Assembly: GCA_964057225.1 (NCBI GenBank)
Contig: OZ059894.1
Coordinates: 12,090,001-12,154,000, forward strand
Reading direction: 5' to 3'
DNA: 64,000 bases
Origin: Auanema rhodensis
Taxonomy: Eukaryota; Animalia; Nematoda
The notes beneath the pieces were generated by a model that worked only from the letters and a program-made list of their open reading frames with translations, was not told where the DNA came from and searched no databases. A program made the translations under genes and the position numbers. Below, piece after piece: positions 597 through 28,395 of this stretch (position 1 is the stretch's first letter; the number at the start of each line of letters is the position of its first letter).

Positions 597-782
597 AATG
601 GGCCGTTCCCGCCAGCAGTGCAAGAGCGGGTCGACCCGTGAGGTGGAGCTAGCAAGCCAGCATCTACCTCAAGTCTCAAAAATCGGTTAACCTTATTGTG
701 AACCAATGGAACACATATCGAAGGTTAATTCGATAAGAACGATTACTACACTTTGATCTTAGCCAAAAGGCCGAGAAGCGAT
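597..782 (-). ncRNA. U2: U2 snRNA, intact
   Basis: Minus strand ATCGCTTCTCGGCCTTTTGGCTAAGATCAAAGTGTAGTA; stem IIa TATCGAA/TTCGATA; IIc complement TTAACCTT/AAGGTTAA; Sm site GATTTTTG; stem-loop IV loop TTGCAC; 3' end approximate. Confidence 0.96.
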
Positions 783-3220: not shown

Positions 3221-6200
3221 ATGGTTTATTGAATAACTAATGTTATGATACAATAAATAACCAATAAAAAAGAGCCCAGAATCGGGGAGACGGTATTACC
3301 AGTACAACTTAAAACAGCAAGTAATTAAAAAGTACATAATAAGACACATTGCCAACAGAGGCTAAAACGACTCAAGAGTCGGGGGAGTGGGTTAAAAAAA
3401 ATGAACAAAAAAATGAATATTAAAGCAGAACAATGAGAAATCAAGTGCCGCTATGATCAAACAATTTGAGTGCCTACGGCAATGATGTTAAAAATAAACA
3501 ACAAAATACATGTACCAATGAAGGTCAGAAAGAAAGAAACAAAAGACAAAAATAAGTAATACAAAAAGTAAATACATTACAATCAAATCACAAACAAGTC
3601 AATTGATAATTTCTTCTTCATACTGCCTTACACCAGAAACATGTTCCACGTAGATATTCCTGGCCCACTTGATGGTATCGGCGACGACGAGCTTCTCCAT
3701 TAGCCGGTTGTAGTGGCTGCTGATCTTGAGTGATCGGAGGGCTTGTACGTTGAGCGGGTCCATAGTTCCAAGCATTCCTACGACATACGCTTCTACACTA
3801 GTCTTATAACCAAGACATTGGTATTGGCTGGCTATGTCAGCATATTTCCTCTCCTTTATCATACGCGCGGCTATCATGGCTTGTCGGCGGTTTTCATAGC
3901 TCACTGTAACATCAACGATACTACAGTGTTTTGCGTCATGATCGACCACTACTATGTCAGGTCGGAGTGTACTATTAATGCCAGGAAGAGGCTGGTTAGT
4001 GTAAACTTCTCCGTTTTTAGGCTCTGGCAGGGCTTTGATAAGACGGTCCACGATGTTGTTGTGGCGGAGTTGGATTGCTCTCGTGTGAAAGTGGCAGTGT
4101 CCAAGAACATGTGCAGCAGTTTCGTTGGGGTAACTACACCTGCGGCACTGTTTGTTTCCTTCTCCGTGTCTTCTACAGCCATTGAGCTGGAGAGTATTAA
4201 GTCGAGCCTTGTGGATGAATCGCCAATCAGCAAACCGTATGAAATCTCCCTTCGCCATAAAGTGATTGGACGCTTTGTTGAGCATTGTGACATCAAAGAC
4301 TTTCCCTTGATCCGGTTTTTGAAGAAGGATCCGAAGGTCTTTCAGCCATAATGCACGTCGCAGGCTTCTGTGGCATAGTGAAGGTGTTAACAGTTGGTTG
4401 TTTAGATTGAGTTCTAAACCACTTTCGAGGCATGTCCAGTTAGCGTTGATGAGTTTCTTGAGTTGACGCATCGCTACTCTTACTCTAGTCCAGATGGAGG
4501 AAACATCAGATGTTTCGGTGTCGAAAATGCCATCAACGGAACCGTTGTAATATGCAGCTGTCTCATCGTTACTGGCTTGACGTTTAATCCTTTTTGATGC
4601 TACTTTTATTGAGTCTTGATGCGCAATATCAGCTACTACAAGATCAGATGACTTCAAAAGTTGGTAGGCATGAGTGACTTCACAGACGTCTGACAGGTGT
4701 TGGAGTCGAGAGAGACCAAGTCCGCCGTAGTTAGTTGGCAGGTAGATTGGTTCAGCACTGGCGTTTGGAGGATAGTGCATCCATCTACGGGCACAGCGTT
4801 TGAGTTCTTTGTCAAAGGCGACTAGTTTACTCTTTGGGACGTGGCCATTCGTCATATGAAAATTAAGGCAGGGCATCAGGAAGGTGCGTACTGCGTCAGC
4901 TTTCTGCCATTCAGCCAGTAAGGATTTGTCAATTTTTTCCAAGTGTTGACTCATGATATTCACTGTTGGAACCGCAGACTTATGTAAATGCATTCCAGTA
5001 GGGATTCCCAGGTGGGAGTAGCTGTCAAATTTGCTGAGAGCGGGTAGAAAGCAGCTCTGAAGCATGTATGAGGCTGTTGATATTTTCCCTTTGTCGATCG
5101 TCAAAGTGGCGCATTTCGCTGGTTTGAAGGTCAAGCCTGTGAAATTAGCCGCATTTGATGCTGCGTCCAACATTTTCTGTAGATCTTCTGATGATGAGGA
5201 GACCAGGGCAAGGTCATCGGCGTACGCTAGCACAGCGATGTTGTGATTGTGTAGCTTATAGCCTGTAGAGGTTTCCAAGATGGTTTTAATTAGAGGTTCA
5301 ATGGCAAGGTTGAACAGGATCGGAGATAGTGGGGATCCTTGTAACACACCTGCGTGAACTGGAATGGTCGAAGTGAGTCCGGAGCCTGTCTGGATTCTTG
5401 TAGAGGCATCTGTGTATAGAGCTCGTACTCGGGATATTGAGGCTTCAGCCATTCCTGACCATCTTAGAACGTCTAGCAGAGTTTCGTGTGGCAGCGATCC
5501 AAAAGCGTTTGCGAGATCAAGCCAAGCAATTGCAATTTTCTCACGTTTACGTTTAGCGTCTGCAATGGTACTTTGCAACAAAAAGTTGTGTTCCATGCAT
5601 CCAGCTTTGGCCACAAAGCCCTTTTGGGAGGGAGAAAGTCTTTTTTCTGCTCTTGCCCATGTTAGCAGTCGATGCGTAAGACAAGCTGAGTACGTCTTAC
5701 CAATTGTGCACGAAAGTGCTATTGGTCGCCAGTTGTTAATGTCAGCTTTATCACCTTTCTTATGGATGAGGACGGTGGTCGACTCTTTCCAGGAAAAAGG
5801 GATGTGTCCTAGCTTGTGTACGGTGTTAAATATCGCTGCTAATATGTGACCTCCTTGGTCAAATTTCTTCCAGTGCGAGTATCGAAGTCCATCAGCTCCT
5901 GGAGCCGTATCGCTGCAACGTCGTATGCGTTCCCAGACTTCCAAAGGGGTGAAAACACCTTCTAATGGGTCGGTACTAGTTGGCAAATCCGGTCTGGTGA
6001 CTGTGATGGGGAGGGCTGGGCCTTGACTGCTGTGAACAGAAAGGAAGTGTTTTTCAACATCTGCAGATGGTATGGTGCAGGTTTCACTTTGTTCTCCGAG
6101 CAGTTGTCGAAAGGCTTTCTTCTTGTTGGCCCTCCAAAGCTTCTGGATCTTCATCGCCTGGGTTTTTTGGTCTTCCTCAGGTTGTGTGTGTGGTCGGCGC

Positions 6201-6929
6201 CTTTGTCGGAAGTTGGGAACTTTGATCATAATGTCAAGAGACTTTCTGATTGTGTCTACCAACTCTTCCAGGACCTGCTCGAGCTCACTTTTGCACACTA
6301 CCTTTTTAATTCTATCCACCCAAATATTTTCAGAGTTTCTATTCGGATCAGGGTCGGCAAAAGATGGTTCTGTACTCGGAACCCTGATCTCGTTGAATAT
6401 TTCACTCTCTCGCGGAAGGGGGGAAACTTCGGCCTCTGGGGACAAGTCCAGAATTGGGGCCTCAAATAAGCGTACCGTTGATGGAGATCCTTGTTCCTGT
6501 CCACTGGATGATGTTTCCTCCATTGTACGCTCCTCCACGGGCGGGGTGGTCGTCCTTGTGCCTGGTGGGCGGGTGTTCCTGATCCTCCGCAATATAGGGC
6601 GGGAACTGGGCTCTCTCGGAGATAGAGGTGAGATCACCACAGTTTCCTCTATGATGCGGAGGCATCCTTCAGCTTTTTTCTGATGGCTTTTAACGGCCTT
6701 CAGATTGCTGGTGAGGCCACAGGCACGGCACTCAAATTCTACTCCGACCTCATGTTCTCTCCGAAGATGGCGGACGAGACCATTGTGGTCTGAGTAGGAT
6801 CGCGGAATAGGAGCGCAGATTGAACAAGAAAAAGGGCTCTGAAGAGGCACCTTTAGCTTGTAAAGCCCTTGCTCCATCTCTAGCAGATCTAAAGACTTAC
6901 GTAGTACAGTTGCAATATCGATTTAGCCA
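3221..6929 (-). mobile_element. Element A copy 1: full-length U2-targeting RLE non-LTR retrotransposon (Utopia-like, NeSL/R2 group)
   Basis: Single ZnF-RT-RLE ORF; 3' end fused to U2 nt 38; same orientation as U2; 52-nt unique leader; ~380-nt 3' UTR ending TCAATAAACCAT. Confidence 0.93.
3599..6877 (-). CDS. Retrotransposon protein: N-terminal zinc fingers, reverse transcriptase, CCHC knuckle, restriction-like endonuclease (1092 aa)
   Basis: CSIC..HLRREH and CRAC..H..C; APGADG, WRPIAL, QKGF, LDLANAFGS, GVLQGSPLSPILF, YADD; CRRC..ETAAHVLGHC, RHN, RPDIVV..VDVT..YE, KERKY. Confidence 0.96.
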   Translation of the reverse strand: MEQGLYKLKVPLQSPFSCSICAPIPRSYSDHNGLVRHLRREHEVGVEFECRACGLTSNLKAVKSHQKKAEGCLRIIEETVVISPLSPREPSSRPILRRIRNTRPPGTRTTTPPVEERTMEETSSSGQEQGSPSTVRLFEAPILDLSPEAEVSPLPRESEIFNEIRVPSTEPSFADPDPNRNSENIWVDRIKKVVCKSELEQVLEELVDTIRKSLDIMIKVPNFRQRRRPHTQPEEDQKTQAMKIQKLWRANKKKAFRQLLGEQSETCTIPSADVEKHFLSVHSSQGPALPITVTRPDLPTSTDPLEGVFTPLEVWERIRRCSDTAPGADGLRYSHWKKFDQGGHILAAIFNTVHKLGHIPFSWKESTTVLIHKKGDKADINNWRPIALSCTIGKTYSACLTHRLLTWARAEKRLSPSQKGFVAKAGCMEHNFLLQSTIADAKRKREKIAIAWLDLANAFGSLPHETLLDVLRWSGMAEASISRVRALYTDASTRIQTGSGLTSTIPVHAGVLQGSPLSPILFNLAIEPLIKTILETSTGYKLHNHNIAVLAYADDLALVSSSSEDLQKMLDAASNAANFTGLTFKPAKCATLTIDKGKISTASYMLQSCFLPALSKFDSYSHLGIPTGMHLHKSAVPTVNIMSQHLEKIDKSLLAEWQKADAVRTFLMPCLNFHMTNGHVPKSKLVAFDKELKRCARRWMHYPPNASAEPIYLPTNYGGLGLSRLQHLSDVCEVTHAYQLLKSSDLVVADIAHQDSIKVASKRIKRQASNDETAAYYNGSVDGIFDTETSDVSSIWTRVRVAMRQLKKLINANWTCLESGLELNLNNQLLTPSLCHRSLRRALWLKDLRILLQKPDQGKVFDVTMLNKASNHFMAKGDFIRFADWRFIHKARLNTLQLNGCRRHGEGNKQCRRCSYPNETAAHVLGHCHFHTRAIQLRHNNIVDRLIKALPEPKNGEVYTNQPLPGINSTLRPDIVVVDHDAKHCSIVDVTVSYENRRQAMIAARMIKERKYADIASQYQCLGYKTSVEAYVVGMLGTMDPLNVQALRSLKISSHYNRLMEKLVVADTIKWARNIYVEHVSGVRQYEEEIIN

Positions 6930-6987
6930 TTAACCTTATTGTGAACCAATGGAACACATATCGAAGGTTAATTCGATAAGAACGATT
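6930..6987 (-). other. Duplicated U2 segment (nt 39-96) forming the head of element A copy 1
   Basis: Exact match to U2. Confidence 0.92.
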
Positions 6988-7153
6988 TATTGAATAACTA
7001 ATGTTATGAAACAATAAATAACCAATAAAAAAGAGCCCAGAATCGGGGAGACGGTATTACCAGTACAACTTAAAACAGCAAGTGATTAAAAAGTACAAAA
7101 TAAAACACATTACCAACAGAGGCTAAAACGACTCAAGAGTCGGGGGAGTGGGT
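6988..7153 (-). mobile_element. 166-bp 5'-truncated element A (3' UTR end only) inserted at U2 nt 38/39 in the regenerated target
   Basis: Matches the 3' UTR haplotype of the copies at 37 kb and 50.7 kb; flanked by U2 nt 39 and nt 38 with no TSD. Confidence 0.92.
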
Positions 7154-8304: not shown

Positions 8305-9484
8305 ACAGTAAAAAGTCCAATCAAGAGAGAAATTTTTTCAACACATAGTTGTTTTTTTTTTAAATATCATTGTTTTTCCTCATAACTCGGTTTAAACTCG
8401 TTCTAACCCGTTGAAATACGTCTAGAAAGTCTTTATAACATGCATATGTATGATAGAACTTCATATTTATTGTAATAGAAAATTTTATTTTCAGACGTCT
8501 TGGTTAACAATGATATGTTTTACCCCCTTATAATTTTTATCATAATGTTCCTTATACGGAACGCTCAATGAAACTTGCTTCCAGAAAAATTTCTTTCTAT
8601 TTTTTCTTCATATGTACGTAGATACTATAGAGAACTATGATAGAAAACTTTAACATTCACGAAATCATCATTTCTCATTACGCTACGGAGGTTTAAAAAG
8701 CTGTGTTTTACCTTATAATAGACCGGAAAACCCTTGTGTTAAAACTGGACCGTTTTTACACATATAAAAATGTCCCGTATTCGGGACCCTAATGTAACTT
8801 TTGATTCCCTATATTTTTTTTCATGAAATTTACAATCTACTGTAGAAAGAAGAATTATTTTTATAAAAACTGTAAATTTTTGAAAAATGAAAACAAAACG
8901 AAAACAAAAACAACTTTTTTTTGAACATTTTCTCACACAAGGGTCCCCCCTTACCTACTTTTTTTCTCATTACTCGTTTCAACCTCATCCGATCACTCTG
9001 CAAACATGTTTAATCGTTCTAACTTGTTGAAATACGTCTTAAAAGTCTAAACAACATGCATATGCATAATAGAAACCACCCGAATAGGCCCCCACGCACT
9101 AAACGAGATATATACATTACCAGTATAGTAATAGAACACATATTGAAGATTAATTCGATAAGAACAATTTATTGACGTAGAGAATGTTTGTTCCGAAAAA
9201 CTACAATATTAAACTATAAAAGTAACAAAAGCGTAGAGGCAGCAAAGACATGAATAAACATAAATGTAAATACAGAATTACCAGGTAGTACATAAGTATG
9301 ACAAAAAATTATAAGAAAGCCATGAAAATAGAAGGTTTGTGAACAAATGAGAGGTACATCTTTGATCGTATAGTCATTTCTAAACCGTTCGTATGCTGCA
9401 GCATCGTCATAAGCGTCACTCAAGTTGAATTTCCATGTGTACTACACGATTTTCATTCTTATTGTTACATTCTTTCCCTGAGGG

Positions 9485-9632
9485 AATGGGCCGTTCCCGC
9501 CAGCAGTGCAAGAGCGGGTCGACCCGTGAGGTGGAGCTAGCAAGCCAGCATCTACCTCAAGTCTCAAAAATCGGTTAACCTTATTGTGAACCAATGGAAC
9601 ACATATCGAAGGTTAATTCGATAAGAACGATT
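9485..9632 (-). pseudogene. U2 3' part downstream of element B copy 1
   Basis: U2 breaks at ...gaacgatt|tattgacg. Confidence 0.9.
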
Positions 9633-10374
9633 TATTGACGTAGAGAATGTTTGTCCCGGAGGACTACAATTTAAAAAAATAATTACTGAAGCCGGAAGGC
9701 AGCGAGAAATAAAATGGATACTACCTGCACTGAGTGCGTCGTATCAAAAAAAAAAAGAGAATGATAGTCTTAAAGAAGAGAACAGCACATAAAGAAAAGT
9801 AGAACTTCCATCTGATGCTACGGGTTTAGAGGAATAGCTTATGTCAGATATCGGTTAAACATAAATGATTAGGGCAATTGCGGAACAAGGATAGTGTAAT
9901 TAACATTGTTTACAGAGTTCAGGTTCTGAAGCTACGGATAAAGAAGGGTTAGCTTGACAGATTGAAGTTAAAATGAACAACGTGGCATATTTCAGTACAG
10001 CACAATAGTAATAGCGAGACTACGGAAAAAAAAAAAAGCTCTGTTCTGGTCCTGGAACGGCGGCTTCGACGTCTTCTGGGTGCCACTGCGGTTTGAAGGG
10101 TCAGCTAGCTTAACAGTAGAACGGCGGCAAGGCGGAACAGGAGAAGAACATCGACGATCCTCCGGCTCGGCTGTCATAGTGTGCGACTTCTTGTTCATAA
10201 TGGTAGCGGTGTCCTCGTGCTTCTTCTTTCTCCACAAAAATTACTACACTATCTGAGCGGGAGAAGCCACAGATAACATAGGACCGCCTCAAGGCCTGGT
10301 AGATCAACCAGTGTTGCTTCAATCACCAAGTATTGCGGCCTGGGCCCTTGGATCAATTCACAACACCAGTATAG
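9633..10374 (-). mobile_element. Element B copy 1: 742-bp non-autonomous U2-targeted insertion (SINE-like or internally deleted retroelement)
   Basis: Same target site as A; ends TCAATAAA; no RT; preceded by U2 nt 1-79 (41-bp duplication); no extended similarity to A by eye. Confidence 0.85.
9992..10198 (-). CDS. Possible short ORF in element B (68 aa, MNKKSHTMTAEPEDRRCSSPVPP...), perhaps a remnant N-terminus of a parent element
   Basis: First ATG of the tracked ORF; GC-rich, Pro/Ser/Arg-rich; no domain recognised. Confidence 0.2.
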   Translation of the reverse strand: MNKKSHTMTAEPEDRRCSSPVPPCRRSTVKLADPSNRSGTQKTSKPPFQDQNRAFFFFRSLAITIVLY

Positions 10375-10453
10375 CAATGGAACACATATCGAAGGTTAAT
10401 TCGATAAGAACGATTACTACACTTTGATCTTAGCCAAAAGGCCGAGAAGCGAT
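10375..10453 (-). pseudogene. U2 nt 1-79 head fused to element B
   Basis: Exact match to U2. Confidence 0.9.
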
Positions 10454-10895
10454 ACAGCATAGCCATGAGTATCAAAGACATCAAGCAAATGTATCGTACT
10501 TGTTACGAGTGCACTCTCTCATTTGAATATAAAAGTGTGGTTTGACAATCTTGACTGTACAGGTCATAAATGGCTCATATAAACTGTGGATTTACTCAAC
10601 TTTTGGACTTATTTTTTTCTTATTCGAAGCGCTGCACTTTTTTCTATTCTTTTTATTCAAATACTTGTATATAGTTTTATATGTACGGTTGCAAAGTTTC
10701 CGAATATTTTATATATTTTTATACAATAATTAGGAGAAGGTTAATACAATGAAATCTCCCAACTTTACAGTGTTTGTATTGCTTACAGTATCTAGAACAA
10801 CCACTCTTGTAATATTAGAGCACATATCAATCAACAACTTTTTCTAGTTATCAAAGCTTTTTTATTTCTTCAAGATATTTCAAATAAAATATAAA

Positions 10896-12894: not shown

Positions 12895-13636
12895 TATTGA
12901 CGTAGAGAATGTTTGTCCCGGAGGACTACAATTTAAAAAAATAATTACTGAAGCCGGAAGGCAGCGAGAAATAAAATGGATACTACCTGCACTGAGTGCG
13001 TCGTATCAAAAAAAAAAAGAGAATGATAGTCTTAAAGAAGAGAACAGCACATAAAGAAAAGTAGAACTTCCATCTGATGCTACGGGTTTAGAGGAATAGC
13101 TTATGTCAGATATCGGTTAAACATAAATGATTAGGGCAATTGCGGAACAAGGATAGTGTAATTAACATTGTTTACAGAGTTCAGGTTCTGAAGCTACGGA
13201 TAAAGAAGGGTTAGCTTGACAGATTGAAGTTAAAATGAACAACGTGGCATATTTCAGTACAGCACAATAGTAATAGCGAGACTACGGAAAAAAAAAAAAG
13301 CTCTGTTCTGGTCCTGGAACGGCGGCTTCGACGTCTTCTGGGTGCCACTGCGGTTTGAAGGGTCAGCTAGCTTAACAGTAGAACGGCGGCAAGGCGGAAC
13401 AGGAGAAGAACATCGACGATCCTCCGGCTCGGCTGTCATAGTGTGCGACTTCTTGTTCATAATGGTAGCGGTGTCCTCGTGCTTCTTCTTTCTCCACAAA
13501 AATTACTACACTATCTGAGCGGGAGAAGCCACAGATAACATAGGACCGCCTCAAGGCCTGGTAGATCAACCAGTGTTGCTTCAATCACCAAGTATTGCGG
13601 CCTGGGCCCTTGGATCAATTCACAACACCAGTATAG
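12895..13636 (-). mobile_element. Element B copy 2
   Basis: Apparently identical to 9633-10374, same junctions. Confidence 0.85.
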
Positions 13637-13715
13637 CAATGGAACACATATCGAAGGTTAATTCGATAAGAACGATTACTACACTTTGATCTTAGCCAAA
13701 AGGCCGAGAAGCGAT
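13637..13715 (-). pseudogene. U2 nt 1-79 head fused to element B
   Basis: Exact match to U2. Confidence 0.9.
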
Positions 13716-16186: not shown

Positions 16187-16628
16187 ACAGCATAGCCATG
16201 AGTATCAAAGACATCAAGCAAATGTATCGTACTTGTTACGAGTGCACTCTCTCATTTGAATATAAAAGTGTGGTTTGACAATCTTGACTGTACAGGTCAT
16301 AAATGGCTCATATAAACTGTGGATTTACTCAACTTTTGGACTTATTTTTTTCTTATTCGAAGCGCTGCACTTTTTTCTATTCTTTTTATTCAAATACTTG
16401 TATATAGTTTTATATGTACGGTTGCAAAGTTTCCGAATATTTTATATATTTTTATACAATAATTAGGAGAAGGTTAATACAATGAAATCTCCCAACTTTA
16501 CAGTGTTTGTATTGCTTACAGTATCTAGAACAACCACTCTTGTAATATTAGAGCACATATCAATCAACAACTTTTTCTAGTTATCAAAGTTTTTTTATTT
16601 CTTCAAGATATTTCAAATAAAATATAAA

Positions 16629-16747
16629 AGCTTACGACACCCGGGATTCCCAAGCCGTCTCCGATCCAAGTACTAACCGGGCCCAACGTTGCTTGACTTG
16701 CCAGATCGGACGGGATGGCGTACTTTCAACGTGGTATGGTCGTAAGC
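16629..16747 (-). rRNA. 5S rRNA (only copy in this shortened unit)
   Basis: Copy of 1225-1343; unit is 360 bp shorter. Confidence 0.96.
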
Positions 16748-16889
16748 AATGTTATATTCTTCATTATCAGTTATATCACTCTAAATCTTGTTGTTAATAG
16801 TTAGGACCACAAAGAAAACAACAGGAACAGTAACAATAACAAAAAAAATTTTTTTTTCACCTATGTGTCTAAAGGTTAGCCATGTATCC

Positions 16890-16935
<46 letters not shown>

Positions 16936-18115
16936 ACAGTAAAAAGTCCAATCAAGAGAGAAATTTTTTCAACACATAGTTGTTTTTTTTTTAAATATCA
17001 TTGTTTTTCCTCATAACTCGGTTTAAACTCGTTCTAACCCGTTGAAATACGTCTAGAAAGTCTTTATAACATGCATATGTATGATAGAACTTCATATTTA
17101 TTGTAATAGAAAATTTTATTTTCAGACGTCTTGGTTAACAATGATATGTTTTACCCCCTTATAATTTTTATCATAATGTTCCTTATACGGAACGCTCAAT
17201 GAAACTTGCTTCCAGAAAAATTTCTTTCTATTTTTTCTTCATATGTACGTAGATACTATAGAGAACTATGATAGAAAACTTTAACATTCACGAAATCATC
17301 ATTTCTCATTACGCTACGGAGGTTTAAAAAGCTGTGTTTTACCTTATAATAGACCGGAAAACCCTTGTGTTAAAACTGGACCGTTTTTACACATATAAAA
17401 ATGTCCCGTATTCGGGACCCTAATGTAACTTTTGATTCCCTATATTTTTTTTCATGAAATTTACAATCTACTGTAGAAAGAAGAATTATTTTTATAAAAA
17501 CTGTAAATTTTTGAAAAATGAAAACAAAACGAAAACAAAAACAACTTTTTTTTGAACATTTTCTCACACAAGGGTCCCCCCTTACCTACTTTTTTTCTCA
17601 TTACTCGTTTCAACCTCATCCGATCACTCTGCAAACATGTTTAATCGTTCTAACTTGTTGAAATACGTCTTAAAAGTCTAAACAACATGCATATGCATAA
17701 TAGAAACCACCCGAATAGGCCCCCACGCACTAAACGAGATATATACATTACCAGTATAGTAATAGAACACATATTGAAGATTAATTCGATAAGAACAATT
17801 TATTGACGTAGAGAATGTTTGTTCCGAAAAACTACAATATTAAACTATAAAAGTAACAAAAGCGTAGAGGCAGCAAAGACATGAATAAACATAAATGTAA
17901 ATACAGAATTACCAGGTAGTACATAAGTATGACAAAAAATTATAAGAAAGCCATGAAAATAGAAGGTTTGTGAACAAATGAGAGGTACATCTTTGATCGT
18001 ATAGTCATTTCTAAACCGTTCGTATGCTGCAGCATCGTCATAAGCGTCACTCAAGTTGAATTTCCATGTGTACTACACGATTTTCATTCTTATTGTTACA
18101 TTCTTTCCCTGAGGG

Positions 18116-25705: not shown

Positions 25706-28395
25706 ATGGTTTATTGAATAACTAATGTTATGATACAATAAATAACCAATAAAAAAGAGCCCAGAATCGGGGAGACGGTATTACCAGTACAACTTAAAAC
25801 AGCAAGTAATTAAAAAGTACATAATAAGACACATTGCCAACAGAGGCTAAAACGACTCAAGAGTCGGGGGAGTGGGTTAAAAAAAAATGAACAAAAAAAA
25901 TGAATATTAAAGCAGAACAATGAGAAATCAAGTGCCGCTATGATCAAACAATTTGAGTGCCTACGGCAATGATGTTAAAAATAAACAACAAAATACATGT
26001 ACCAATGAAGGTCAGAAAGAAAGAAACAAAAGACAAAATAAGTAATACAAAAAGTAAATACATTACAATCAAATCACAAACAAGTCAATTGATAATTTCT
26101 TCTTCATATTGCCTTACACCAGAAACATGTTCCACGTAGATATTCCTGGCCCACTTGATGGTATCGGCGACGACGAGCTTCTCCATTAGCCGGTTGTAGT
26201 GGCTGCTGATCTTGAGTGATCGGAGGGCTTGTCCGTTGAGCGGGTCCATAGTTCCAAGCATTCCTACGACATACGCTTCTACACTAGTCTTATAACCAAG
26301 ACATTGGTATTGGCTGGCTATGTCAGCATATTTCCTCTCCTTTATCATACGCGCGGCTATCATGGCTTGACGGCGGTTTTCATAGCTCACTGTAACATCA
26401 ACGATACTACAGTGTTTTGCGTCATGATCGACCACTACTATGTCAGGTCGGAGTGTACTATTAATGCCAGGAAGAGGCTGGTTAGTGTAAACTTCTCCGT
26501 TTTTAGGCTCTGGCAGGGCTTTGATAAGACGGTCCACGATGTTGTTGTGGCGGAGTTGGATTGCTCTCGTGTGAGAGTGGCAGTGTCCAAGAACATGTGC
26601 AGCAGTTTCGTTGGAGTAACTACACCTGCGGCACTGTTTGTTTCCTTCTCCGTGTCTTCTACAGCCATTGAGCTGGAGAGTATTGAGTCGAGCCTTGTGG
26701 ATGAATCGCCAATCAGCAAACCGTATGAAATCTCCCTTCGCCATAAAGTGATTGGACGCTTTGTTGAGCATTGTGACATCAAAGACTTTCCCTTGATCCG
26801 GTTTTTGAAGAAGGATCCGAAGGTCTTTCAGCCATAATGCACGTCGCAGGCTTCTGTGGCATAGTGAAGGTGTTAACAGTTGGTTGTTTAGATTGAGTTC
26901 TAAACCACTTTCGAGGCATGTCCAGTTAGCGTTGATGAGTTTCTTGAGTTGACGCATCGCTACTCTTACTCTAGTCCAGATGGAGGAAACATCAGATGTT
27001 TCGGTGTCGAAAATGCCATCAACGGAACCGTTGTAATATGCAGCTGTCTCATCGTTACTGGCTTGACGTTTAATCCTTTTTGATGCTACTTTTTTTGAGT
27101 CTTGATGCGCAATATCAGCTACTACAAGATCAGATGACTTCAAAAGTTGGTAGGCATGAGTGACTTCACAGACGTCTGACAGGTGTTGGAGTCGAGAGAG
27201 ACCAAGTCCGCCGTAGTTAGTTGGCAGGTAGATTGGTTCAGCACTGGCGTTTGGAGGATAGTGCATCCATCTACGGGCACAGCGTTTGAGTTCTTTGTCA
27301 AAGGCGACTAGTTTACTCTTTGGGACGTGGCCATTCGTCATATGAAAATTAAGGCAGGGCATCAGGAAGGTGCGTACTGCGTCAGCTTTCTGCCATTCAG
27401 CAAGTAAGGATTTGTCAATTTTTTCCAAGTGTTGACTCATAATATTCACTGTTGGAACCGCAGACTTATGTAAATGCATTCCAGTAGGGATTCCCAGGTG
27501 GGAGTAGCTGTCAAATTTGCTAAGAGCGGGTAGAGAGGAGCTCTGTAGCATGTATGAGGCTGTTGATATTTTCCCTTTGTCGATCGTCAAGGTGGCGCAT
27601 TTCGCTGGTTTGAAGGTCAAGCCTGTGAAATTAGCCGCATTTGATGCTGCGTCCAACATTTTCTGTAGATCTTCTGATGATGAGGAGACCAGGGCAAGGT
27701 CATCGGCGTACGCTAGCACAGCGATGTTGTGGTTGTGTAGCTTATAGCCTGTAGAGGTTTCCAAGATGGTTTTAATTAGAGGTTCAATGGCAAGGTTGAA
27801 CAGGATCGGAGATAGTGGGGATCCTTGTAACACACCTGCGTGAACTGGAATGGTCGAAGTGAGTCCGGAGCCTGTCTGGATTCTTGTAGAGGCATCTGTG
27901 TATAGAGCTCGTACTCGGGATATTGAGGCTTCAGCCATTCCTGACCATCTTAGAACGTCTAGCAGAGTTTCGTGTGGCAGCGATCCAAAAGCGTTTGCGA
28001 GATCAAGCCAAGCAATTGCAATTTTCTCACGTTTACGTTTAGCGTCCGCAATGGTACTTTGCAACATAAAGTTGTGTTCCATGCATCCAGCTTTGGCCAC
28101 AAAGCCCTTTTGGGAGGGAGAAAGTCTTTTTTCTGCTCTTGCCCATGTTAGCAGTCGATGCGTAAGACAAGCTGAGTACGTCTTACCAATTGTGCACGAA
28201 AGTGCTATTGGTCGCCAGTTGTTAATGTCAGCTTTATCACCTTTCTTATGGATGAGGACGGTGGTCGACTCTTTCCAGGAAAAAGGGATGTGTCCTAGCT
28301 TGTGTACGGTGTTAAATATCGCTGCTAATATGTGACCTCCTTGGTCAAATTTCTTCCAGTGCGAGTATCGAAGTCCATCAGCTCCTGGAGCCGTA
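25706..28395 (-). mobile_element. Element A copy 2: 5'-truncated (~2.7 kb), diverged haplotype, with ~1.24 kb upstream host deletion
   Basis: Breaks in the codons for DTAPGADG (ggagccgta|cgt|ttctaaccc) and joins the spacer at the equivalent of position ~1988. Confidence 0.92.
26085..28395 (-). pseudogene. 5'-truncated RT-RLE reading frame (tracked as 26085-28100, 671 aa); lacks zinc fingers and native start
   Basis: About 99% identical to the C-terminal part of the 1092-aa protein. Confidence 0.88.

What the first reader, a model, noticed from the sequence alone, without database searches (positions are those of the whole stretch)
9633..10453. Element B: a non-autonomous U2-headed, U2-targeted hyperparasite
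Seen: a 742-bp insert with no RT sits at the same nucleotide and orientation as A, behind a U2 nt 1-79 head (41-bp duplication). By eye it shares with A only the terminal TCAATAAA; it has a GC-rich 5' half and a T-rich 3' half. Inference: a SINE-like element that uses the U2 Pol II promoter and is mobilised in trans by A or by a second Utopia lineage, analogous to SIDE elements of R2 in rDNA. Host array, autonomous A and satellite B together form a three-tier system competing for one site. Caveat: the two copies are adjacent and identical, so they are probably one insertion duplicated; the fixed relic is the evidence for repeated mobility.
Basis: partly seen in the sequence, partly recalled or inferred. 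Interest (0 to 1): 0.87.

Follow-up and report, generated by a model that had tools for sequence, protein, structure and literature searches.

The report
Non-coding passenger in U2 genes
A short DNA element that encodes no protein sits in U2 spliceosomal RNA genes at the spot where a known jumping gene (Utopia) inserts; it most likely borrows that gene's enzyme and the U2 promoter, and its RNA is predicted to fold so as to hide the U2 piece it carries, but nobody has shown that it jumps today.

Summary
Observation confirmed. B is 742 bp (9633-10374, - strand), has no RT remnant, follows U2 nt 1-79 and is followed by U2 nt 39-190, at the same base as the Utopia-type element A. The two copies lie in identical units, so they are one event.

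Found here:
(1) Public contigs show B in two DNA studies at under 1% of array depth, plus sibling subfamilies with the same U2-79 junction and ends but unlike middles.
(2) Every spacer holds a fossil B-end/U2 40-79/B-start junction.
(3) The 'duplication' is probably a head carried by the element: a truncated A at this site has none.
(4) B's first 92 nt are predicted to pair with and mask U2 nt 1-41.
(5) A presumed RNA run holds B but not the spacer.

Best reading (0.72): a non-autonomous retroelement family driven by the U2 promoter and copied by Utopia-type protein. It works like an R2 SIDE but fails the SIDE and SINE membership tests: no ribozyme found, no Pol III promoter, no tail shared with A. 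That A is the helper, and that B jumps now, are not shown. The scan noted this family earlier in other windows of this genome.

The parts
10454..10853 (-). U2 upstream (promoter) region, unchanged in B-bearing units
   Evidence: 0 differences in 400 nt against intact units
10375..10453 (-). U2 nt 1-79 head; keeps the insertion site (after nt 39), lacks the Sm site (nt 100-106)
   Evidence: 100% to U2 1-79
9633..10374 (-). Element B, 742 bp, non-coding
10269..10374 (-). 5' module shared with sibling subfamilies; shared part ends at or 8 nt after the first ATG (10279-10277)
   Evidence: joints at 10269 and 10277, 0 differences over 10280-10400 in run X4
10368..10378 (-). Anti-branch-point segment across the head/B junction; pairs with U2 nt 31-41 (11 bp, 2 G-U)
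   Evidence: predicted fold
10283..10307 (-). Anti-U2 segments pairing with U2 nt 1-8, 11-15, 19-20, 24-30
   Evidence: predicted fold
10234..10267 (-). Degenerate sense copy of U2 nt 4-41 followed by an Sm-site-like T run; outside the shared module
   Evidence: alignment score reached by 1 of 2000 shuffles
9759..10268 (-). Variable middle (about 510 nt), replaced by unlike 558-559 nt middles in siblings; holds a T12 run at 10037-10026
9811..10009 (-). Decayed internal duplication, about 85 nt twice at 114-nt spacing (10009-9925, 9895-9811)
   Evidence: 0 of 3000 shuffles; region chosen after the repeat scan
9633..9758 (-). 3' module about 92-93% shared with siblings; ends at the AATAAA signal
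9481..9632 (-). U2 nt 39-190, the downstream remainder of the disrupted gene
9119..9219 (-). Fossil B-B junction in the spacer of every unit: B 3' end (9219-9169), U2 40-79 (9168-9129, 35/40), first 10 nt of B (9128-9119)
12895..13715 (-). Second, identical copy of head plus B (unit duplication)
3221..6987 (-). Element A, candidate helper: 1092-aa ORF (6877-3599) with RT, CCHC, RHN and PD..D motifs, behind U2 39-96
6988..7152 (-). 165-bp 5'-truncated A inserted in the head of A copy 1, no duplication, same 3' junction as B

Best explanation
B is one subfamily of an old family of non-autonomous retroelements that depend on a Utopia-type RT/endonuclease (A, or another lineage using the same site). 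Proposed cycle: (1) the untouched U2 promoter makes a chimeric RNA, U2 1-79 plus B (inferred; weak RNA support). (2) B's first 92 nt fold back on U2 1-41 and hide the U6-pairing and branch-point regions, so the chimera is less likely to poison splicing (structure predicted, purpose inferred). (3) The RNA ends at B's AATAAA or runs on into U2 40-190 (inferred). (4) Utopia protein nicks another U2 gene after nt 39 and copies the RNA by target-primed reverse transcription (site shown, enzyme inferred). (5) The cDNA ends in U2 1-39 sequence, anneals to the upstream half of the target and primes the second strand, so U2 40-79 is re-created each time. The repeat is then cargo, not a staggered-cut duplication, and the target is rebuilt so that elements can stack (junctions shown, mechanism from the R2 model). 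(6) Unequal crossing-over in the array then multiplies or removes units, which explains the two identical neighbours and the fixed fossil.
For: Same base and orientation as A. Repeat length is fixed per family (40 for B, 57 for A) and zero for a 5'-truncated A at the same site, which a fixed staggered cut would not give. Earwig R2 carries 22 bp of downstream 28S at every 5' end, and the authors explain this by propagation through the RNA template (PMC3774820). The fossil junction needs two B-type elements head to tail with the same U2-79 junction. At least two siblings share both ends around unlike middles, and a fourth, more diverged family shares the 5' module. Masking: mean pairing of U2 1-41 is 0.78 vs 0.21 in shuffles, reached by 1 of 500; duplex energy reached by 5 of 1000. 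The diverged family keeps the fold and turns a G-U into a G-C pair at the branch-point helix. Two of three scorpion Utopia-like loci carry a clear anti-U2 box before the ATG, the third a weaker one. Run X10 (RNA by guess) holds B's middle at depth 23.6 and none of the spacer 8962-9231, while DNA runs hold the spacer 125-160 times deeper than B. U2 40-190 itself occurs as head-to-tail repeats starting at this site, which suggests an RT with loose template choice.
Against: B shares no 3' UTR with A beyond 7-8 nt, whereas R2 and R1 SIDEs keep the partner's 3' end (PMC3414825). No fresh or 5'-truncated young B copy was seen. B's middle is identical in three runs, so its present copies could all be one insertion amplified. 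Substitutions in the diverged family do not significantly avoid the pairing positions (3 of 14 fall on 29 of 100 positions, one of them improving the pair; p 0.16-0.37). X10 is RNA only by guess, and contigs give no strand, ends or level. Uniform 5' junctions cannot be used to count events.
Confidence: 0.72

Rival explanations
1. B-type elements once retrotransposed but are now passive. They persist and diversify only through unequal crossing-over and gene conversion in the array, which also keeps their ends uniform next to U2 sequence.
For: The two window copies are one duplicated unit. The array is strongly homogenised: flanks 0-1 differences, all 20 fossils identical. The abrupt change from an identical 5' module to unlike middles looks like recombination. 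No 3' homology to the active A.
Against: Several distinct middles persist between conserved ends, while the fossil, which is exposed to the same conversion, has decayed (35/40 in its U2 part, all changes transitions). The anti-U2 fold is kept in a family about 87% alike. B appears transcribed.
Confidence: 0.17
2. B is a host RNA or locus captured once by template switching onto U2 during a Utopia insertion, with no further mobility.
For: It ends at a generic AATAAA. It has no homology to A. RLE-type RTs template-jump in vivo (U12 and tRNA at R2 5' ends, PMC3414825). The host genome could not be searched for a source of the middle.
Against: Sibling subfamilies and the fossil tandem junction require more than one event with the same U2-79 junction. 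The antisense module matches U2 itself. The middle holds a decayed duplication, which points to age. A capture may still be how the family began.
Confidence: 0.05
3. B-bearing units are domesticated U2-variant genes whose chimeric RNA has a host role, for example a switchable decoy or Sm-bound RNA.
For: Intact promoter region; an internal U2 mimic with an Sm-like site that is mostly single-stranded in the predicted fold; two alternative folds, in which the antisense pairs with the head or with the mimic; presence in a presumed RNA run.
Against: Insertion at the exact retroelement site; stacking; B is under 1% of units; the mimic lies outside the module that siblings share.
Confidence: 0.04

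Closest known systems
[quoted passage not shown]
   Same: Non-autonomous, sits at the autonomous partner's exact site in a tandem RNA-gene array, relies on the host gene's promoter, old lineages with conserved ends.
   Different: Target is U2, not 28S. No HDV ribozyme found. Ends are not detectably those of the resident autonomous element A. Carries target sequence from downstream of the cut as a fixed head, and an anti-U2 module.
Utopia (NeSL clade, RLE-type, U2-specific; PMC4640811)
   Same: Same insertion site (downstream flank starts at human U2 nt 39), tandem stacking as in Nasonia, several families co-maintained in U2 arrays. A has this architecture, and its homologues end in AATAAA plus a short tail plus U2.
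   Different: B encodes nothing. The parts of the paper I read (1-3 of 5, all results) describe no non-autonomous partner, and report no duplication in arthropods and 20 bp in reptiles, not 40 or 57 nt heads.
SINEU of crocodilians (PMC4494074)
   Same: U2-derived 5' head, oligo-T inside, no internal promoter.
   Different: SINEUs are mostly under 500 bp, are thought to use Tx1-type machinery and prefer Mariner-N4. B returns to U2 itself and so regains a real U2 promoter at every insertion.
Earwig R2 with a 5' copy of downstream 28S (PMC3774820)
   Same: Uniform 5' junction with target sequence from downstream of the cut, explained by cDNA annealing to the upstream target.
   Different: Autonomous, 22 bp, released by a ribozyme. 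In B the RNA 5' end would be the U2 start itself.

Membership tests
SIDE (R2 type) | Non-coding and inserted at the autonomous element's specific site | tested here: met
SIDE (R2 type) | 5' and 3' ends derived from an autonomous element by internal deletion | tested here: not met
   No significant match to A's ends or to the seven fetched loci; another parent in the genome cannot be excluded
SIDE (R2 type) | 5' HDV-like ribozyme | tested here: not met
   Rfam E<=10 gave one chance hit; my own HDV descriptor gave 0 hits and no hammerhead core; the descriptor had no positive control and cleavage was not assayed
SIDE (R2 type) | Co-transcribed from the host gene promoter | tested here: inconclusive
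   Upstream 400 nt identical to intact units; B present in a presumed RNA run; start site not testable with contigs
SINE | Head derived from a small RNA gene | tested here: met
   U2 1-79
SINE | Internal Pol III promoter | tested here: not met
   Head is U2, a Pol II gene with an upstream promoter (PMC4494074); T12 and T11 runs in B; no tRNA, 5S or 7SL match in B
SINE | 3' tail shared with the partner LINE | tested here: not met
   Only the last 7-8 nt are shared with A
SINE | Interspersed copies | tested here: inconclusive
   All junctions seen are in U2; the whole genome could not be searched
SINEU | Tx1-type partner and Mariner-N4 target preference, length under 500 bp | tested here: not met
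   742 bp, U2 target, resident partner is RLE-type
Utopia (for element A) | Single ORF with RT, C-terminal zinc finger and restriction-like endonuclease | tested here: met
   RVT_1 E 5e-28; YADD 552, CCHC 911, RHN 938, PD..D 973
Utopia (for element A) | 3' junction at the conserved U2 site after the branch-point sequence | tested here: met
   homologues L003, L005, L007 have the same junction
Utopia (for element A) | RT phylogeny inside the Utopia/NeSL lineage | not tested
   No named Utopia reference sequences were on hand

The most novel reading that the evidence does not exclude
B is a currently active class of retro-parasite that needs no 3' homology to its helper. It is recognised and placed by U2 homology on both flanks, takes a new U2 promoter at each insertion, masks its U2 head with an antisense module, and may use an Sm-like site to enter the snRNA export and re-import route where it meets Utopia protein.
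Probability: 0.2. Interest if true: 0.8.

Novelty: new variant of a known kind. Interest (0 to 1): 0.55.

Why it matters
It would be a non-autonomous partner of Utopia, which I found no report of in the searchable literature (Repbase could not be searched). It suggests how an snRNA-headed retroposon can be transcribed without an internal promoter, a question left open for SINEU: by always landing behind a U2 promoter. It also gives a natural minimal template for an RLE-type RT at a site other than rDNA, which makes template recognition and 5' end joining directly testable. The anti-U2 module offers a testable answer to how U2-headed chimeric RNAs avoid disturbing splicing.

Tried and rejected
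Assembly artefact: rejected; B's middle has 0 differences in runs of three studies, though one may be the assembly's source.
True staggered-cut duplication: rejected as unlikely (lengths 40, 57 and 0 at one site).
Internal deletion of A: rejected.
Ribozyme: none found.
Small ORFs in B: no Pfam support; the single tblastn hit (P0019, E 0.01 among 104 queries) is taken as chance.
B 3'-end structure shared with A: none stable or consistent.
Fossil homology: firm for the last 50 nt; the further 150 nt align but do not beat shuffles.
An upstream U2 22-36-like remnant at 9370-9355, which would make the fossil a 5'-truncated copy, is only suggestive (p 0.02-0.05).
An internal duplication within the 5' module was not significant (154 of 2000).
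A metagenome pattern scan for head plus antisense gave one unrelated U2 fold-back (L004).
The findings search by sequence was blank and means nothing here.
The bacterial promoter scan is irrelevant to this organism.

Full report
Setting. The window is a tandem array of about 2477-bp units, each with a U2 gene and usually two 5S genes on the minus strand.

Observation. U2 1-79 (10453-10375), B (10374-9633) and U2 39-190 (9632-9481) are as reported. The next unit is identical over 3262 bp, so the two copies are one event. B has no Utopia protein remnant and no supported ORF. It has no significant similarity to A at either end. A encodes 1092 aa with RT, CCHC, RHN and PD..D motifs. Its homologues from other animals end in AATAAA, a short tail and the U2 sequence that follows the branch-point region, the Utopia site of PMC4640811.

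The duplication. At this one site B repeats U2 40-79, full-length A repeats U2 40-96, and a 165-bp truncated A stacked in the head of A copy 1 repeats nothing. A fixed staggered cut does not explain this. A head carried in the RNA does: the cDNA anneals to upstream target and primes the second strand, as proposed for R2, where earwig elements carry 22 bp of downstream 28S at every 5' end (PMC3774820). The head rebuilds the target, so elements stack and do not exclude each other.

Repeated insertion. Every unit's spacer contains B's 3' end (last 50 nt 84%, E 1e-9), then U2 40-79 (35/40), then the first 10 bases of B. This is a head-to-tail junction of two B-type elements and mirrors the A-in-A stack. 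All 20 complete fossils are identical, so the array homogenised one old junction. Contigs laid on 8800-10415 show B's middle unchanged in DNA runs X9 and X4, at about 0.8% and 0.6% of spacer depth (a rough ratio, not a copy number). They also show two siblings that share the 5' module and about 92-93% of the 3' module but have unlike middles of 559 and 558 nt; one lies at about 9% of spacer depth. A fourth family lays on 10260-10404 with 19 differences and an 11-nt insertion at the head junction. B is therefore one member of a diversified family with a constant junction, not a single capture. A decayed duplication in its middle points to age.

Transcription. The 400 nt upstream of B units equal those of intact genes. 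Run X10, RNA by the tool's guess, holds B's middle and both siblings but not the spacer, which is over 100 times deeper than B in DNA. This fits transcription. It does not show strand, start, end or level.

The 5' module. Head plus B 1-100 folds so that 33 of U2 nt 1-41 pair with nt 76-79 and B 1-92, covering the regions that pair with U6 and the branch point. Shuffles reach this masking in 1 of 500. The diverged family, rebuilt from the 14 listed substitutions and the insertion (five differences were not listed), keeps the fold and improves the branch-point helix. The avoidance of paired positions is not significant. A masks the branch point more weakly (16 of 300 shuffles). Scorpion homologues carry an anti-U2 box just before the ATG, and B's shared module ends at or just after its first ATG. 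This suggests, without proving, that the module descends from the 5' UTR of some Utopia lineage. A sense U2 mimic with an Sm-like run follows at 10267-10234 (1 of 2000 shuffles; lead s1-393757). It can pair with the antisense when the head is absent, but it lies outside the part siblings share. No ribozyme was found.

Mechanism. Shown: the site, the orientation, the fixed head, stacking, subfamilies, the intact upstream region. Predicted: the masking fold. Inferred: transcription from the U2 promoter, copying by Utopia-type protein, cDNA annealing. Open: whether A is the helper. B lacks A's 3' UTR, so either another lineage serves it or recognition rests on flanking U2 homology and the AATAAA end. 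Head-to-tail repeats of U2 40-190 starting at this site hint that the RT accepts U2-type RNAs.

Comparison. B works like an R2 SIDE (PMC3414825) and has a head like SINEU (PMC4494074). It fails defining tests of both: no ends from the resident autonomous element, no ribozyme found, no Pol III promoter, no shared tail. Literature searches returned no non-autonomous Utopia partner, but the library is partial and Repbase was not searched.

Verdict. A real feature and a new variant of a known kind, interest 0.55.

Noticed in passing
window 9481-9631 and 10366-10415, runs X9, X4, X14: U2 40-190 occurs head to tail with a 13-nt linker, and short U2 40-78-like repeats reach depths of 1e4-1e5, far above the array spacer: a U2-derived satellite probably lies elsewhere in the genome.
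   Followed up: no
window 9591-9623, run X4: A further junction type at U2 nt 79/80 with 25 other letters, at depth about 497: possibly another U2-headed family.
   Followed up: no
window 736-750 and all U2 copies: The array's U2 reads ATC where most U2 genes read TCT, directly after the branch-point sequence, that is at the retroelement cut site.
   Followed up: no
window 6988-7152: 5'-truncated A variant (4 substitutions against copy 1) stacked in the head of A copy 1; it lacks the 7-nt tail of full-length copies.
   Followed up: yes
window 25706-28395: A copy lacking its first 1020 nt and joined directly to spacer; the head, the U2 5' part and the 5S genes of that unit are deleted.
   Followed up: partly
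window 9355-9370: Weak U2 22-36-like match just upstream of the fossil's B-like part (p 0.02-0.05); if real, the fossil is a 5'-truncated B inserted in another B's head.
   Followed up: yes
L004 2043-2168: Unrelated animal contig with U2 4-47 followed by an inverted copy of U2 1-39 that ends at the Utopia site: a possible route by which anti-U2 boxes arise.
   Followed up: partly
L007 4338-22691: Scorpion cluster of stacked Utopia-like elements, each behind short U2-derived heads; a 1.84-kb non-coding segment ends in 347 nt of element 3' UTR.
   Followed up: partly
window 16187-18111: One unit has a single 5S gene (16629-16747) in place of two.
   Followed up: no
window 9890-9909: A second, weaker antisense match to the U2 target region inside B's middle (72-75% over 18-20 nt).
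   Followed up: no
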